IMG/VR virus record: IMGVR_UViG_3300028608_000006
Span: 1 to 64,000 of that record
Length of the DNA: 64,000 nt
Reading direction: 5' to 3' (one strand)
The number at the start of each line of letters is the position of its first letter. Position 1 is the first letter of the stretch. Both the position numbers and the translations under genes were made by a program. Shown one piece after another: positions 6,041 through 64,000 of this stretch. Under the pieces are notes generated by a model. It ran no database searches, had not been told where the DNA came from, and saw only the letters and a list, made by a program, of their open reading frames with translations.

Positions 6041-9000
6041 CTAGGCTGCGCGCTTCAATTGCAGCATTCGCTTACTACGTTCAAACTTGGCCTGCTCCAG
6101 CAGACTATCGACTGTCATGAGGCGAGACTGTTCAGGCGGCAGTACTTTGCCGAGCTTCCGAATCTCTGCTTCCAGACGCATAGCCAAGATGTTGTCGTTG
6201 GTATTGAGCAACTCTTCAGTTAGCCCCTCCACCCGCGCTTTCACCTTGTCCAAGAATTGAACCACATGAGGCTCCATTGCAGGACCCTTCTTGTTCGAAC
6301 CCGTATCCAGCAGGTTCTTGGTATCCGTTAATGCAATCCCACCTTGGATACCATACAGGGACTTGTTAGCCCCCAACTTGATGAACCAGTACGTCAACAG
6401 CCAGCCGATTACCAAGTCATCGTGCTTCTTGGCATCGTGGTCGATTCGATCACCCTTAGTCCGCAGGTTGATCAACTCGTCCGCCAGCTTGTCGTAGTTC
6501 AGACCGTACGCTGTCATCCCCACCGCTTCCTGAATCAACCCGTAAAGAATCTCACGAGAACGGGAAGTGGTGTTGAACCCGAAGTACTGCTTAAACTTCA
6601 GGTAGAAGTTCTTCTGACGATAAGCGAACTTAACGTTTTGGATCTCCTTGAACTCTTTCTCGTACGTTACCGTGTCTTGGTAGACTTGGTTGAAGATGCG
6701 GGTGAATGGATCCATCCCTTTCGCCGGCAGCATAATCAACAGGTTGTCGATCATGTGGTGGGCGTAGTTGCGTTCAATCACCAGCAGGCTGTTGTTGAGG
6801 ACTTGCAGCAGGTCCACTATAATGGCTGTCACGTCGTCCAAGAAGGCCAATGGATAACGACCCACCCCAACTACCTTACCAGTACGCATGCTCCTGATAA
6901 TGATGGTACAGGCGTCCTTGTTGATAGCCGAGGACGTATCCACACCAATCAGGAAGTAGTCGTTGTACTCTTTCTTACCCATGTTGATGAGTTCTTGCTG
7001 GGTGCAGAAGAAGTCCATGAACAACCCGCTTTCCTTGTACTCCTTACTCCAGACCACCGCGCTCTTACAGTTGTTGATTGCTTCCCGCGTTACGTCATCA
7101 AACAGACGGTTCTCACCATCTTCCACCCACATCAACAACAAGTCGATCTTGGCCTTAGCAAGGCTGAGGTTGAGGGAGTCGATTGTCTCCTTCACCCAAT
7201 CCTTGTCTTTGCCCAACTGCATGTAGTTGTAAACCATGGCAATCGATGGACTGGTGGTAGACTTCGGCGAAGCACGCAGCAGACGTTCACGCAGATGACT
7301 CTCACTGAAGGAGTCAAAGAACTTCTCACGCCATTCAGTCGAGGACATCAGCTTCTCGAACATGAACTCGCCACTTGGGTGCAACGTTGTGTTCGGAGTC
7401 GTAATGAAACTGATTCCGTACGGTTTACCCTGTGTCCTGGCGTTGGCCATCGCGGTCAGTGCAGAAGGTGCACATCCGTTGATGATCTCTTCGATGAAAC
7501 TAATGTAAGCCGGTTCGTCGTAGGTTGTCGTTTCAACGGTAAGACCCCGTCCCAAGTCACCTGCTGCATCACGACCCATCTGAGGAACGTTAATGTTGAG
7601 CGTGTTGACATACTCATCACCAAAGGCCTTGTAGTTGAGGTAGTTACCTGAGTCCTTGTCTCGCCAGGTGGGGTTCACCAAGTAAGACGGCATACAGGTG
7701 CGGATCTTCTTGATGGCGTCAATGAACTGAGCCCGGTTATCCGACTTCAACGTAATGAGGTGAGACTTGTACCCTCGACCGTTGATGTAGGTCAGCCAGA
7801 AGTTGATGACCTGAACAGACACCGTGTTGTGCGTGACAATGAAGTCATCGGTGATGTACAGGTGTTCCTGGTTGTCCACTTCGATACAACTGGCCTCGTC
7901 GTCGCCACAGTACTCGATCTTGTCGACCCAGAGCCGGTTGTCCACTTCCGGACGCTTCTCTTTACGGAAACGGAAGTACTCCATCTCCTTAGGCAGCGTG
8001 ACCGTCAGGGTTTCCTTCTCTGGCTTGGCAGTGCCACCCAATCCCCTCACCAGGTAAGCCAACTGAGACGCTATAAGCGCGTTAGGCGCCTTTAAGGTCA
8101 AAGTCTTACCGATCTTCAGTCCTTCATCGAAAAACGCGTGTAGCAGCTTCAGGCGATCTTCCTGAGCCCCTTCAAGGTAGGACGATGGAAGCCCGACGTT
8201 TAAATCGAAGTCAAAAGGTTTTCCATCCCGACGTTTAATGATTCGGAACTTCTTGTCCTTGTCCATGGCCAGCGTCTGAGGAACCACAGACTCCAAGTAA
8301 GCGACTTGCTCCTTACTCAGGTTACGACCCCGCAACACACCATCGGTTAACTCAGAGTTGATCATGCAACCGATGAGGTAAGGGTCCAAGGTAAGACGTT
8401 GCGGTTTACCCTTCTCCGAACGAATCAACGGAAGCTCGAACGCATGCCCCTTCGCCATGGCGGTAAGCAGATCCGCTGTGGTGTAGTCGTCCGTAATACC
8501 CCGACGGCTCGCAGTACCCCGGGAAAAGTCCTTCAGGGTCCACAAGTGCTCAGCACCCACATCGGTGGAACGACCGTCGCTCATGGTCACCCGGTAAAGA
8601 CGCAACTTGCCCTGAGGGTGGATGCCAATCACGTTGGTGGTCTTACCAAAGCGGTCGATCAGCACATCACCAGTACGCAGGTCACCGATCTTCTTCCACG
8701 TATCAGCAGGGGTGATGTTACCCTGCTTCTCAACCTTGACTCGAACCTTGCTCGAGTTACGCTGCATCTTGCCTTGTTGGCGAGGCATGATCATGTACGT
8801 GGTGATGTGGTTGAGGTAGTTCCAGATGAAACTGATGTTACCCCGGTTCGCCATGAAGTTCTGATCAGGCTTTAACCGACAGACCTCACGCAGGAAGTAC
8901 CAGAAGTTAGTCCGGCACTCTTCGGCGATCATCAACTTCTGTTCGTTGGTGAGATCGTCAGCGTAAGGATCCACACCCTGCAACATGCGGTTGTTCAGCT

Positions 9001-9310
9001 GCAACAGGAAGTAGTAGTTCTTAATACCTTGTTGACGGAAGACTTCGGCGGTACGAATAAAGCTCGCATTACCGGTCTTCAAATCAGGTGCAGCTTTGTA
9101 ACGGTAGAAGTCTTTCAGGAAGCGCACGGTCTTGATGCTGTGCAGGCTGTCTTCCTCGAAGTGAGCCATCAAGGTCTCTTCTTCGGTGCGTGCATCGGAG
9201 TCCACACGGTTCTGCCGGTCGTCAATCAACTTCTTGGGTAGGTTCTGCGCACCCAAGTATGTTACCAGCTTCTTTGCAAACTCCAATGTCTTTTCATAAG
9301 CTTCAGACAT
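6041..9310 (-). CDS. terL: terminase large subunit (phiKZ gp25-like) with intein
   Basis: Walker A MPRQQGK|TVS after intein removal, Walker B-like TTYDEPAY, nuclease motifs IGVDTSS and HDDLVIG; next to the sheath/tube block. Confidence 0.9.
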   Translation of the reverse strand: MSEAYEKTLEFAKKLVTYLGAQNLPKKLIDDRQNRVDSDARTEEETLMAHFEEDSLHSIKTVRFLKDFYRYKAAPDLKTGNASFIRTAEVFRQQGIKNYYFLLQLNNRMLQGVDPYADDLTNEQKLMIAEECRTNFWYFLREVCRLKPDQNFMANRGNISFIWNYLNHITTYMIMPRQQGKMQRNSSKVRVKVEKQGNITPADTWKKIGDLRTGDVLIDRFGKTTNVIGIHPQGKLRLYRVTMSDGRSTDVGAEHLWTLKDFSRGTASRRGITDDYTTADLLTAMAKGHAFELPLIRSEKGKPQRLTLDPYLIGCMINSELTDGVLRGRNLSKEQVAYLESVVPQTLAMDKDKKFRIIKRRDGKPFDFDLNVGLPSSYLEGAQEDRLKLLHAFFDEGLKIGKTLTLKAPNALIASQLAYLVRGLGGTAKPEKETLTVTLPKEMEYFRFRKEKRPEVDNRLWVDKIEYCGDDEASCIEVDNQEHLYITDDFIVTHNTVSVQVINFWLTYINGRGYKSHLITLKSDNRAQFIDAIKKIRTCMPSYLVNPTWRDKDSGNYLNYKAFGDEYVNTLNINVPQMGRDAAGDLGRGLTVETTTYDEPAYISFIEEIINGCAPSALTAMANARTQGKPYGISFITTPNTTLHPSGEFMFEKLMSSTEWREKFFDSFSESHLRERLLRASPKSTTSPSIAMVYNYMQLGKDKDWVKETIDSLNLSLAKAKIDLLLMWVEDGENRLFDDVTREAINNCKSAVVWSKEYKESGLFMDFFCTQQELINMGKKEYNDYFLIGVDTSSAINKDACTIIIRSMRTGKVVGVGRYPLAFLDDVTAIIVDLLQVLNNSLLVIERNYAHHMIDNLLIMLPAKGMDPFTRIFNQVYQDTVTYEKEFKEIQNVKFAYRQKNFYLKFKQYFGFNTTSRSREILYGLIQEAVGMTAYGLNYDKLADELINLRTKGDRIDHDAKKHDDLVIGWLLTYWFIKLGANKSLYGIQGGIALTDTKNLLDTGSNKKGPAMEPHVVQFLDKVKARVEGLTEELLNTNDNILAMRLEAEIRKLGKVLPPEQSRLMTVDSLLEQAKFERSKRMLQLKRAA
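7826..8767 (-). mobile_element. intein (314 aa, class-3 WCT type, degenerate LAGLIDADG remnant) in terminase
   Basis: Begins MQRNSSKV after GK; block B GRSTDVGAEHLW, block F ASCIEVD, ends FIVTHN; +1 residue is Thr. Confidence 0.88.
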
Positions 9311-62895: not shown

Positions 62896-64000
62896 ATGTA
62901 TAACCCATTCTCGGTTGGCGTAAAACAAACCGGAGTCTACGTTCATGTGACTGGCGTTTCGTTTTACAACCTAGCCAAGGACATCGAGAAGTTCTACAGC
63001 ACGGCGCTGGTCACAAAGTATATGATTCGCCGTGAAAGCTGGGACACAATCAAAGTCCATAATTTCTACTTGGTTGAGCTGCACTTCTTGTTAGGTGAAT
63101 TGCTCAAGCTGAAAACACTGCGTAGCCGTCGTCGTTCTCTTAATGAGCTGCGTCAGCTGTTGGAAACTGATACGTGGATCAAGGACACGGTCACGCCTTC
63201 TGGTAAACCTTTCGACTTTAAGCGACTGGATGCCTTTACCAAGAGCCCTTTCCCTAAACAACGGGAGTTCTTGGAACAGTATCCCCTGATCACCAAGAGT
63301 TACCACCTTAAAGGCATCCTGCTGGACTCTGTACCGGGTTCGGGTAAAGCGATGCCCAAGAGTACCAAGGTTAAGGTACCGGGCGGCTGGAAGGCTCTGG
63401 GAGCGATTCAGGTAGGCGATCAGGTCATGACCCCTTCAGGTCGTGTGTCTGATGTGTCGGGTGTGCATGATCAAGGTGTAACTGACGTTTACCGCTTCTA
63501 CTTCGAAGACGGTCGTTGGGCAGACTCTCACCCTGAACACTTGTGGCATGTGGATGAGGTCAGTGTTGTAGATGGCGAAGTGGTCATTAGCCCTGACAAC
63601 GTAACCACGACGCAAGACATCCTCGATCACTTCCAAGACTACGAGTATCAGATCCCGCTGGTTAGCAAGATCGATGGCTTGTTGTCGGGTGAAGGTTTCG
63701 CTTCCATTGAGGTGGCTGAAGAACTGTTGCTGTCAAGTATAGCAATAGACGATCCAGTCCTAGAATTACCGTATTCAGAACGCTTTAATATTGCCAAGGC
63801 GATGTTGGGTCGTTCCGGCTGTCAGATCTCTGCGGGGAGTGTTGCCTTTGTTACTTCTAACACCATGGCGGCATCTAACTTCCAAGCCTTGATCTGGAGC
63901 TTGGGTGGTATTGCTGAGAAGACGGCTATTGTTGACGTCGGTTACCGGGTAGATGTTTACCACGGCGAGATCGAAGAACTGGTGGCTGATCTGGTAGGCC
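62896..64000 (+). CDS. SF2 (DEAD/UvsW-like) helicase, 5-prime part, intein-containing; runs off the window
   Basis: My translation is open from ATG 62896 to the end: ...FPKQREFL...KGILLDSVPGSGK (Q motif and Walker A), then the intein. Absent from the ORF track because there is no stop. Confidence 0.75.
   Translation, partial: MYNPFSVGVKQTGVYVHVTGVSFYNLAKDIEKFYSTALVTKYMIRRESWDTIKVHNFYLVELHFLLGELLKLKTLRSRRRSLNELRQLLETDTWIKDTVTPSGKPFDFKRLDAFTKSPFPKQREFLEQYPLITKSYHLKGILLDSVPGSGKAMPKSTKVKVPGGWKALGAIQVGDQVMTPSGRVSDVSGVHDQGVTDVYRFYFEDGRWADSHPEHLWHVDEVSVVDGEVVISPDNVTTTQDILDHFQDYEYQIPLVSKIDGLLSGEGFASIEVAEELLLSSIAIDDPVLELPYSERFNIAKAMLGRSGCQISAGSVAFVTSNTMAASNFQALIWSLGGIAEKTAIVDVGYRVDVYHGEIEELVADLVG
63349..64000 (+). 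mobile_element. intein (partial, Ala-initiated, likely class 3) in helicase Walker A
   Basis: GK|AMPKSTKVKVPGGWKALGAIQVGDQV...VHDQG...YRFYFEDGRWADSHPEHLW; LIWSLGG LAGLIDADG remnant. Confidence 0.82.

What the first reader, a model, noticed from the sequence alone, without database searches (positions are those of the whole stretch)
7826..8767. Met-initiated class-3 intein splitting the terminase Walker A
The intein starts with Met, not Cys/Ser/Ala, right after RQQGK and ends THN/T. It carries the class-3 WCT triad: Trp in block B (HLW), Cys in block F (SCIEV) and Thr in block G. Class-3 inteins splice through the block-F Cys and do not need an N-terminal nucleophile. The endonuclease motifs are decayed (GCMINSE, HAFFDEG), so it is probably immobile. 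DNA packaging would depend on a single-Cys splicing step that could be redox- or condition-sensitive; this last point is inference.
Basis: partly seen in the sequence, partly recalled or inferred. Interest (0 to 1): 0.6.

Follow-up and report, generated by a model that had tools for sequence, protein, structure and literature searches.

The report
Class-3 intein in phage terminase P-loop
The DNA-packaging motor gene of this jumbo phage is interrupted, inside its ATP-binding loop, by a self-excising protein segment (a class-3 intein) of a kind already described in phage terminases, so the finding is correct but ordinary.

Summary
Window 6041-9310 (-) encodes a 1089-aa large terminase (TerL) of an EL-like, phiKZ-related jumbo phage. 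Residues 182-495 (window 7826-8767, -) are a 314-aa insert between Lys and Thr of the Walker A motif RQQGK|T. Intein-free homologues close the gap at exactly these two residues. The insert has the class-3 signature: non-nucleophilic residue 1 (Met), block B His74/Trp76, block F Cys294, block G Thr312-His313-Asn314, and Thr+1. All of these except residue 1 are invariant in 99 intein-bearing homologues. Residue 1 takes 11 different residues, so Met is not special. An AlphaFold model (pLDDT 93.5) matches PI-SceI (Z 23) and the class-3 Msm DnaBi1 intein (Z 19, rmsd 1.6 A). The middle domain keeps the LAGLIDADG fold, but both catalytic acid positions are replaced (Ser, Gly). It is still under purifying selection (dN/dS about 0.04-0.17). 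The genome has one TerL gene, so splicing is obligatory. Two more class-3 P-loop inteins sit in helicases of the same genome. Phage EL gp011 carries the orthologue. Class-3 inteins in terminase P-loops have been described since 2009. Redox sensitivity has a precedent (Msm DnaBi1) but nothing here supports it.

The parts
6041..9310 (-). TerL precursor ORF, 1089 aa plus stop. It is the only large-terminase gene in the 231,788-bp genome.
   Evidence: ORF list and translation. PHROG phrog_2 'terminase large subunit', E 6.8e-44. 75% identity over the C-extein to phage EL gp011, annotated terminase large subunit. Single TerL match in the phage's own genome.
8768..9310 (-). N-extein, residues 1-181, ending ...MIMPRQQGK (first part of Walker A).
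   Evidence: phrog_2 E 2.7e-37 when searched alone by reference. An intein-free homologue profile aligns lpRQtGKs with T4 gp17 Walker A SRQLGKT.
8414..8767 (-). Intein N-terminal Hint half (intein residues 1-118). It holds block A, starting at Met1 (ATG 8765-8767), with a clade-specific insertion of about 10 residues in the first hairpin. It also holds block B with His74 (8546-8548) and Trp76 (8540-8542).
   Evidence: phmmer to gp41-1_WCT 6riz, Msm DnaBi1 6bs8 and Mch DnaB1 6rix. H and W invariant in 99 homologues. Model pLDDT above 90. dN/dS 0.05 against L008.
7958..8413 (-). LAGLIDADG-fold middle domain (intein residues about 119-270). Helix 1 is PYLIGCMINSE (8351-8383) and helix 2 is LLHAFFDEG (8120-8146). 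The two positions that hold catalytic Asp in canonical relatives are Ser and Gly here.
   Evidence: Foldseek and VIA-align to PI-SceI (Z 23.3, 301 residues aligned), TliVMA, PI-PfuI and I-DmoI. Column comparison with Aeromonas-type homologues that read ..GVLLGDG and ..GLMDTDG and hit Pfam PF14528/PF05204. No Pfam hit for the window's copy. dN/dS 0.15 against L008.
7826..7957 (-). Intein C-terminal Hint half (intein residues 271-314). It holds block F with Cys294 (TGT 7886-7888) and block G with Thr312-His313-Asn314 (7826-7834).
   Evidence: ASCIEVDNQEHLY...THN aligns with VRCVEVDNPEHLY...THN of the class-3 Msm DnaBi1. C, T, H and N invariant in 99 homologues.
6041..7825 (-). C-extein, residues 496-1089, starting with Thr+1 (ACG 7823-7825), the Walker A Thr. 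It continues through Walker B and the RNase-H-like nuclease domain.
   Evidence: Intein-free homologues resume at T[VS]... The profile hits gp17 Walker B and nuclease motifs. The model of intein-free homologue P0099 matches T4 gp17 3cpe, E 1.2e-17.

Best explanation
This is a class-3 intein of 314 residues with a LAGLIDADG-type middle domain. [quoted passage not shown] The precursor cannot bind or hydrolyse ATP because the P-loop is split, so it must splice to become a packaging motor. By analogy with the characterised class-3 inteins, splicing should proceed in five steps. First, the block F Cys294 thiol attacks the Lys(-1)-Met1 peptide bond, helped by block B His74 and Trp76, giving a thioester-branched intermediate on Cys294. 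Second, the N-extein is passed to the hydroxyl of Thr+1. Third, Asn314 cyclises, with His313 assisting, and releases the intein. Fourth, an O-to-N shift restores a normal peptide bond. Fifth, the result is the intact motif RQQGKT. Residue 1 plays no chemical role, which is why it drifts freely (Met here). The endonuclease domain has lost both catalytic acids. The intein is fixed in the whole EL-like clade, so it most likely no longer homes and is inherited mainly with the gene. What is shown: position, boundaries, signature residues, fold, conservation, selection, and single-copy host gene. What is inferred: the chemistry and the loss of endonuclease activity.
For: Boundaries: intein-free homologues close exactly at GK|T, and the genome-level profile breaks at the same residues. 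Signature: His74, Trp76, Cys294, Thr312, His313, Asn314, Thr+1 and Lys-1 are 100% conserved in 99 homologues, while residue 1 takes 11 residue types. Homology: the best sequence hits in the PDB are class-3 or WCT inteins, namely 6riz, 6bs8, 6rix and 6riy. Structure: model pLDDT 93.5, pTM 0.92. It matches PI-SceI at Z 23.3 and the class-3 Msm DnaBi1 at Z 19.2, rmsd 1.6 A, 123 of 125 residues, 26% identity. Host: TerL by PHROG, by a profile hit to T4 gp17 with Walker A and B aligned, and by fold. There is one TerL in the genome. Selection: Hint halves dN/dS 0.04-0.05, like the exteins (0.03-0.05), against the nearest relative L008. The middle domain is at 0.15, and at 0.04-0.17 in six independent close pairs. 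Endonuclease: the catalytic positions are Ser and Gly here and vary freely in the clade. Aeromonas-type relatives keep GDG and DTDG, hit Pfam LAGLIDADG_3/Hom_end, and co-occur with empty-site alleles. All 74 cluster representatives at 53% identity or more (P0003-P0076) and all EL-like viral loci carry the intein. GC content is not distinct from the flanks. Mechanism and class definition: PMC2807308. The 'classic' Lys|Thr P-loop site in phage TerL: PMC5050341.
Against: No experiment or proteomic datum shows the spliced product for this phage. The mechanism is transferred from MP-Be DnaB and Msm/Mch DnaB inteins, which are only 25-27% identical. Block B lacks the Asp (DxxH) noted in mycobacterial class-3 inteins; the sequence here is G-A-E-H-L-W. 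The middle domain is clearly under purifying selection, which a purely dead remnant would not need. The intein and C-extein trees share the same major clades, but each data set rejects the other's topology (AU p 4e-5 and below 1e-100). Some lateral exchange of intein sequence has therefore occurred.
Confidence: 0.88

Rival explanations
1. The intein is still a mobile element. Either its LAGLIDADG domain cuts or nicks intein-free alleles using non-canonical residues, or the intein spreads between co-infecting phages by flank-guided recombination. The purifying selection on the middle domain would then reflect homing function.
For: Middle-domain dN/dS is 0.04-0.17, far below 1. The fold is fully retained at high confidence. 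The intein and extein trees are statistically incongruent. Pairs with equal C-extein identity (94%) differ widely in middle-domain identity: 86% for L008 against 58% for L009. Glu residues sit next to both substituted catalytic positions (INSE, FFDEG).
Against: Those Glu residues are not conserved even among the closest relatives, which read INSQ, FFDTH, FFDYG and FFDGS. No empty target allele was found anywhere in the EL-like clade. The incongruence is confined to within-clade rearrangements typical of general phage mosaicism, and the N-extein shows it too. There is no Pfam LAGLIDADG hit.
Confidence: 0.15
2. The intein has been co-opted as a post-translational switch. Splicing through the single catalytic thiol is inhibited by oxidants or other conditions, delaying terminase activity. 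It may act in step with the two helicase inteins of the same genome. Alternatively, the dead LAGLIDADG domain has a new DNA-binding or folding role.
For: The class-3 Msm DnaBi1 intein is reversibly inhibited by H2O2 through its block F Cys (PMC6195587). The Mch DnaB1 crystal shows that Cys oxidised (PMC7664689). Three class-3 inteins sit in the P-loops of TerL and two SF2 helicases in this one genome. The middle domain is conserved without its catalytic residues. The model also matched WhiA, which I recall (not checked here) as a LAGLIDADG-derived DNA-binding protein, as a weak fold match (Foldseek E 0.016).
Against: In Msm DnaBi1 the switch needs a second Cys (Cys48). Here the only other Hint-domain Cys (Cys285) is not conserved; the column reads C/A/S/V/I/L. 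Relatives work without the intein (pTD1 has none, RisingSun has only the TerL one). Fixed, decaying inteins in P-loops are the common neutral outcome of homing. Nothing in the sequence can show conditionality.
Confidence: 0.1
3. The insert does not splice. It would be a permanent inserted domain or a dead intein, or it splices by a class 1 or class 2 route.
For: There is no direct evidence of splicing for this phage. Pfam does not recognise the insert.
Against: The insert splits GK|T of the only TerL. All splicing residues are invariant and under strong purifying selection. Met1 cannot perform an N-S/N-O acyl shift. Class 2 inteins lack the WCT triplet (PMC2807308), which is present here.
Confidence: 0.02

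Closest known systems
Class-3 inteins: mycobacteriophage Bethlehem DnaB intein (prototype), Msm DnaBi1 (PDB 6BS8), Mch DnaB1 (6RIX/6RIY)
   Same: Non-nucleophilic residue 1. Trp at block B position 12, two residues after the B:10 His. Cys at block F position 4. Thr-His-Asn at block G. Thr+1. Insertion in an ATPase P-loop. The Hint core superposes on 6BS8 at rmsd 1.6 A over 123 of 125 residues (PMC2807308, PMC6195587, PMC7664689).
   Different: Only 25-27% identical. Residue 1 is Met (Pro in MP-Be, Ala in Msm and Mch). About 10 extra residues in the block A hairpin. Block B has Gly, not Asp or Ser, at position 7. Carries a full-size LAGLIDADG-fold domain, unlike the mycobacterial mini-inteins. 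Lacks the Cys48-type disulfide partner.
Mycobacteriophage TerL1-a P-loop inteins (Kelley et al. 2016, PMC5050341)
   Same: Phage large terminase host. Insertion between the invariant Walker A Lys and the nucleophilic Thr, which the paper calls the 'classic' P-loop site. That paper finds both class 1 and class 3 inteins among mycobacteriophage inteins.
   Different: Different terminase family (Terminase_1 of actinophages, against a T4-gp17-like TerL of phiKZ/EL-like jumbo phages of Gram-negative hosts). No detectable direct orthology. The passages I read do not state the splicing class of the TerL1-a inteins themselves.
Pseudomonas phage EL gp011 (terminase large subunit, 1088 aa) and Erwinia phage RisingSun gp240
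   Same: Orthologous gene with an orthologous intein at the same codon. Same WCT residues and the same degenerate LAGLIDADG motifs. The C-extein is 75% (EL) and 68% (RisingSun) identical. From memory, not verifiable with the tools here, the old InBase registry listed a 'PhiEL ORF11' intein.
   Different: Residue 1 is Gln in EL and Leu in RisingSun. The intein is about 41-44% identical. EL has four related inteins, this genome has three, and RisingSun has one.
PI-SceI / VMA-type bifunctional LAGLIDADG inteins
   Same: Overall two-domain architecture: Hint plus an inserted LAGLIDADG endonuclease fold. Z 23.3 over 301 residues.
   Different: PI-SceI is a class-1 intein (Cys1) with an active endonuclease. 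Here the mechanism is class 3 and both catalytic acids are lost. It also lacks the extra DNA-recognition region of PI-SceI (314 against 454 residues).

Membership tests
Class-3 intein (Tori et al. 2010) | Residue 1 is not Cys, Ser or Thr | tested here: met
   Met1 (ATG 8765-8767). The family shows M, L, A, F, Y, E, P, Q, G and D, with a single Cys among 99.
Class-3 intein (Tori et al. 2010) | Block B Trp at position 12, two residues after the B:10 His | tested here: met
   His74-Leu75-Trp76 aligns with HQW of Msm and Mch DnaB inteins and HLW of gp41-1_WCT. Invariant in 99 of 99.
Class-3 intein (Tori et al. 2010) | Block F position 4 Cys | tested here: met
   Cys294 in ASCIEVD aligns with the Cys of VRCVEVD in 6bs8 and 6rix. 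Invariant in 99 of 99.
Class-3 intein (Tori et al. 2010) | Block G position 5 Thr, followed by penultimate His and terminal Asn | tested here: met
   Thr312-His313-Asn314. Invariant in 99 of 99.
Class-3 intein (Tori et al. 2010) | [quoted passage not shown] | tested here: met
   Thr+1 (ACG 7823-7825). It is also the Walker A Thr in intein-free homologues.
Class-3 intein (Tori et al. 2010) | HINT fold with the termini brought together | tested here: met
   AF2 pLDDT 93.5. Z 19.2, rmsd 1.6 A to 6bs8, and Z 16-19 to many mini-inteins and hedgehog Hint.
Class-3 intein (Tori et al. 2010) | Splicing absolutely requires the block F Cys and passes through a block F branched thioester intermediate | not testable with these tools
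   Needs a reporter carrying Cys294Ala or Cys294Ser, and trapping of the intermediate.
Active LAGLIDADG homing endonuclease | Two-fold alpha-beta-beta-alpha-beta-beta-alpha fold with two LAGLIDADG helices | tested here: met
   The middle domain matches PI-SceI, PI-PfuI, TliVMA and I-DmoI. Helices at intein residues 129-136 and 202-216.
Active LAGLIDADG homing endonuclease | Acidic metal-binding residue (Asp or Glu) followed by Gly at the end of each LAGLIDADG helix | tested here: not met
   The columns that read G-D-G and D-T-D-G in Aeromonas-type homologues read N-S-E and D-E-G-L here. The catalytic columns are Ser and Gly, and they vary freely across the EL-like clade.
Active LAGLIDADG homing endonuclease | Recognised by the family profiles (Pfam PF14528, PF05204) | tested here: not met
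   No Pfam family at E up to 1 for P0002. Distant homologues P0085 and P0086 do hit them.
Active LAGLIDADG homing endonuclease | Intein-free target alleles co-exist in close relatives | tested here: not met
   No intein-free allele among 74 cluster representatives at 53% identity or more (P0003-P0076) or among the EL-like viral loci. Empty alleles occur only in the Vibrio- and Aeromonas-type clades.
Phage large terminase (T4 gp17-like) | N-terminal ATPase with Walker A and Walker B, plus a C-terminal RNase-H-like nuclease | tested here: met
   PHROG phrog_2. The profile of intein-free homologues hits gp17 3ezk at 5.5e-8 with RQxGK(T/S), (I/L)DE and HDDLV aligned. The model of P0099 matches 3cpe at 1.2e-17, plus T7, D6E, Sf6 and HK97 terminases.

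The most novel reading that the evidence does not exclude
The three class-3 inteins of this nucleus-forming-type jumbo phage sit in TerL and two SF2 helicases, all between Lys and Thr of a P-loop. All three have catalytically dead but selectively maintained endonuclease remnants. They could act together as a thiol-dependent post-translational timer or stress brake that couples replication and packaging. Alternatively, the retained LAGLIDADG fold has been exapted for a new role.
Probability: 0.08. Interest if true: 0.65.

Novelty: new member of a known kind. Interest (0 to 1): 0.27.

Why it matters
The finding correctly annotates a gene that public records often mislabel. Homologues are called 'ATP-dependent DNA helicase', 'DarB-like antirestriction' or 'gyrA', in my reading most likely because of the intein. 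It also shows that a class-3 intein is fixed in the terminase of the whole EL-like branch of phiKZ-related jumbo phages. For intein biology it offers a large natural series: 99 diverged alleles with a freely varying residue 1 and a dead but conserved LAGLIDADG domain. That series could be used to ask what constrains residue 1 and why endonuclease remnants persist. It does not reveal a new mechanism. Class-3 splicing, P-loop Lys|Thr insertion and terminase hosts are all published.

Tried and rejected
- Pfam on the whole precursor and on the intein alone gave nothing relevant. Identification came from PHROGs, PDB sequence search and structure instead.
- PHROGs found no family for the C-extein alone. 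A profile of intein-free homologues and a fold search settled its terminase identity.
- Antisense or out-of-frame endonuclease, as described for some actinophage inteins (bioRxiv 10.1101/2025.01.02.630785): four plus-strand ORFs over the intein have no Pfam family. The in-frame domain folds as LAGLIDADG. Rejected.
- Recent acquisition: GC content of the intein (0.50-0.56) is not distinct from the flanks, and the intein is present in the whole clade. Rejected.
- A second, uninterrupted TerL that would make splicing dispensable: none in the genome.
- Doubt about the N-terminal junction: naive offsets to mini-inteins suggested that block A starts about 10 residues later. The family alignment shows this is a clade-specific insertion in the hairpin after position 10, not a shifted junction.
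- Literature searches for a report of the phage EL intein ('phiEL', 'Pseudomonas phage EL' with intein) found nothing in the held library. The supplement of PMC2807308 that lists class-3 inteins is not held.
The exteins were searched separately by reference, and a natural intein-free homologue (P0099) was folded instead.
- Complex prediction, the reads tools and the large representative search were not needed.
Full report
OBSERVATION. The minus strand of window 6041-9310 is one open frame of 1089 codons. RQQGK precedes it and TVSVQ follows. I verified the key codons on the raw sequence: ATG 8765-8767 (Met1), CAC-TTG-TGG 8540-8548 (His74-Leu75-Trp76), TGT 7886-7888 (Cys294), ACG-CAC-AAC 7826-7834 (Thr312-His313-Asn314) and ACG 7823-7825 (Thr+1).

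HOST GENE. Pfam does not recognise the protein. PHROGs places the N-extein in phrog_2, 'terminase large subunit', at E 6.8e-44 for the precursor and 2.7e-37 for the N-extein alone by reference. By tblastn the C-extein is 75% identical to Pseudomonas phage EL gp011 and 68% identical to Erwinia phages RisingSun and Joad. RefSeq annotates these as terminase large subunit. Weaker matches reach about 300 phiKZ-like jumbo phages.

I aligned 22 natural intein-free homologues into a profile (A3). It hits T4 gp17 (3ezk, E 5.5e-8). The alignment pairs lpRQtGKs with the gp17 Walker A SRQLGKT, liDEpafi with Walker B YIDECAFI, and the nuclease motifs (vDtSd, hDDlv) with their gp17 counterparts. An AlphaFold model of the intein-free homologue P0099 (pLDDT 85) matches T4 gp17 (3cpe, E 1.2e-17) and the T7, D6E, Sf6 and HK97 terminases.

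The window belongs to a complete 231,788-bp IMG/VR virus record with a single TerL gene. Profile A3 matches that record in two pieces that break exactly at the insert: profile positions 1-129 at 8765-9136 and positions 128-718 at 6041-7828. The exteins were searched separately by reference, and a natural intein-free relative stood in for the spliced product.

JUNCTIONS. A word-index search returned 120 relatives. In the alignment with the query (121 proteins), 99 carry an insert at this site and 22 do not. The closest insert-free proteins (772-823 aa; P0096, P0097, P0099, P0103-P0113) read PRQ[QSF]GK immediately followed by T/S-V. The gap is therefore exactly residues 182-495.

A naive offset to solved mini-inteins suggested that block A might start about 10 residues later. 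The family alignment resolves this. Distant members have a canonical block A (for example LSKLDSLVKVPNGWRRMGDI). The EL-like clade has a roughly 10-residue insertion in the hairpin after position 10. The model places this insertion as a confident loop.

CLASS. The best sequence matches in the PDB are gp41-1 with a grafted WCT motif (6riz) and the class-3 inteins Msm DnaBi1 (6bs8) and Mch DnaB1 (6rix, 6riy). In these alignments, EHLW aligns with HQW/HLW, and ASCIEVDNQEHLY...THN aligns with VRCVEVDNPEHLY...THN. Across the 99 intein-bearing homologues, Lys-1, His (B:10), Trp (B:12), Cys (F:4), Thr-His-Asn (G:5-7) and Thr+1 are all 100% conserved. Residue 1 varies: M 23, L 22, A 13, F 12, Y 8, E 7, P 5, Q 3, G 3, D 2, C 1.

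This is the published definition of class 3: a non-nucleophilic residue 1 co-varying with the WCT triplet and Thr/Ser+1. Such inteins are mostly found in P-loops of helicase-like proteins, including phage terminase large subunits (PMC2807308). The Lys|Thr position is the 'classic' P-loop insertion site seen in mycobacteriophage TerL (PMC5050341). Met1 is thus one of many tolerated residues and not a special feature. The prototype starts with Pro.

STRUCTURE. I cut intein-only sequences out of 35 related loci by reference and used them to fold the window's intein. The result was pLDDT 93.5 and pTM 0.92. Foldseek and VIA-align give PI-SceI at Z 23.3 (301 residues) and other LAGLIDADG inteins for the whole chain. 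For the Hint core they give Msm DnaBi1 at Z 19.2, rmsd 1.6 A, 123 of 125 residues and 26% identity, the highest identities in the list. I-DmoI matches the middle domain.

ENDONUCLEASE DOMAIN. Aeromonas-type homologues read PY(L/V)(L/V)GVL(L/I)GDG and LLQGLMDTDG. They hit Pfam LAGLIDADG_3 and Hom_end and co-exist with empty-site alleles that have the same extein flanks. In the window the same columns read PYLIGCMINSE and LLHAFFDEGL. The catalytic Asp columns are Ser and Gly. The neighbouring Glu residues are not conserved even in the nearest relatives, which read INSQ, FFDTH, FFDYG and FFDGS. Loss of endonuclease activity is therefore likely.

The domain is nevertheless not drifting. Against the nearest relative (L008), dN/dS is 0.15 for the middle domain, 0.04-0.05 for the Hint halves and 0.03-0.05 for the exteins. 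Five further independent close pairs give 0.04-0.17 for the middle domain (ratios computed from the dN and dS values; dS is often near saturation, so these are rough).

INHERITANCE. Every representative at 53% identity or more (P0003-P0076) and every EL-like viral locus carries the intein. GC content is unremarkable. Maximum-likelihood trees of the intein and the C-extein recover the same five major groups but differ inside them. Each alignment rejects the other's topology (AU p 4e-5 and below 1e-100). For example, L008 and L009 are both 94% identical to the window in the C-extein but 86% and 58% identical in the middle domain. I read this as ancient fixation with mainly vertical descent, plus ordinary phage mosaic recombination. 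Residual mobility is not excluded.

MECHANISM (inferred). The block F Cys294 attacks the Lys-Met bond, and the N-extein passes to Thr+1. Asn314 then cyclises, and an O-N shift restores RQQGKT. Because the only TerL has its P-loop split, packaging depends on this reaction.

Redox control is documented for the class-3 Msm DnaBi1 intein through a Cys48-Cys118 disulfide (PMC6195587). Here the only other Hint-domain cysteine (Cys285) is not conserved. Only direct oxidation of the lone thiol could apply, and nothing in the sequence speaks to it.

CONTEXT. The same genome holds two more class-3 inteins, each between Lys and Thr of an SF2-helicase P-loop (GSGK|A...THN|T and GYGK|A...THN|T). Phage EL has four related inteins, RisingSun has one, and Vibrio phage pTD1 has none.

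VERDICT. This is a new member of a known kind. An orthologue has sat in the phage EL genome record for years, and class-3 terminase P-loop inteins were described in 2009-2016. Interest is modest.

Noticed in passing
window 62896-64000 (+); the ORF continues to genome 65748. The intein starts at window 63349 and ends at genome 64161, beyond the window end.: A second class-3 intein (271 aa; Ala1, HLW, LCITV, THN|T) splits the P-loop GSGK|T of a 950-aa SF2 DNA helicase (phrog_62, Helicase_C). Its endonuclease region looks reduced and degenerate.
   Followed up: partly
L005:1090-1848 (-) = genome 203958-204716, outside the window. The host ORF is L059:1849-4149 (-).: A third class-3 intein (253 aa; Ala1, HQW, TCISV, THN|T) splits GYGK|T of a 767-aa SF2 helicase (phrog_16). 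Its second LAGLIDADG motif reads LLRGLLDATG, so the catalytic Asp is lost.
   Followed up: partly
Genomes behind L022 (phage EL), L024 (RisingSun), L008, L014 and L052 (pTD1): The number of related class-3 inteins varies between relatives: EL 4, the window's genome and two close relatives 3, RisingSun 1, Vibrio phage pTD1 0. This suggests spread between P-loop sites within genomes, and lineage-specific gain or loss.
   Followed up: partly
P0084-P0089 and P0095 against P0105-P0113; L038/L046/L054/L056 against L052/L057: In the Aeromonas- and Vibrio-type clades, intein-bearing and intein-free TerL alleles share the same extein flanks. The Aeromonas-type inteins keep canonical GDG and DTDG motifs, which is the pattern expected for an active homing cycle. 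The EL-like clade is fixed and decayed by contrast.
   Followed up: partly
window 6041-9310, compared with L008 and L009: Divergence along the gene is mosaic. Against L008, synonymous divergence is 2.3 in the N-extein and 0.75 in the C-extein. The middle-domain identity of equally related phages is either about 0.9 or about 0.6. This points to recombination inside the terminase gene.
   Followed up: partly
Public records listed (AJ697969, MF459647, NC_070950, OM810292 and others): Orthologous intein-bearing terminases are annotated as 'putative ATP-dependent DNA helicase', 'DarB-like antirestriction', 'gyrA: DNA gyrase subunit A' or 'hypothetical protein'. In my reading this is probably because the intein draws hits to intein-bearing helicases and gyrases.
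   Followed up: no
window 6344-7651 (+), 7760-8095 (+), 8399-8875 (+): Long antisense open frames (435, 111 and 158 aa) run opposite the terminase gene. The two over the intein, plus two shorter ones there, have no Pfam family. The 435-aa frame was not scanned. They look like by-products of codon composition, not genes.
   Followed up: partly
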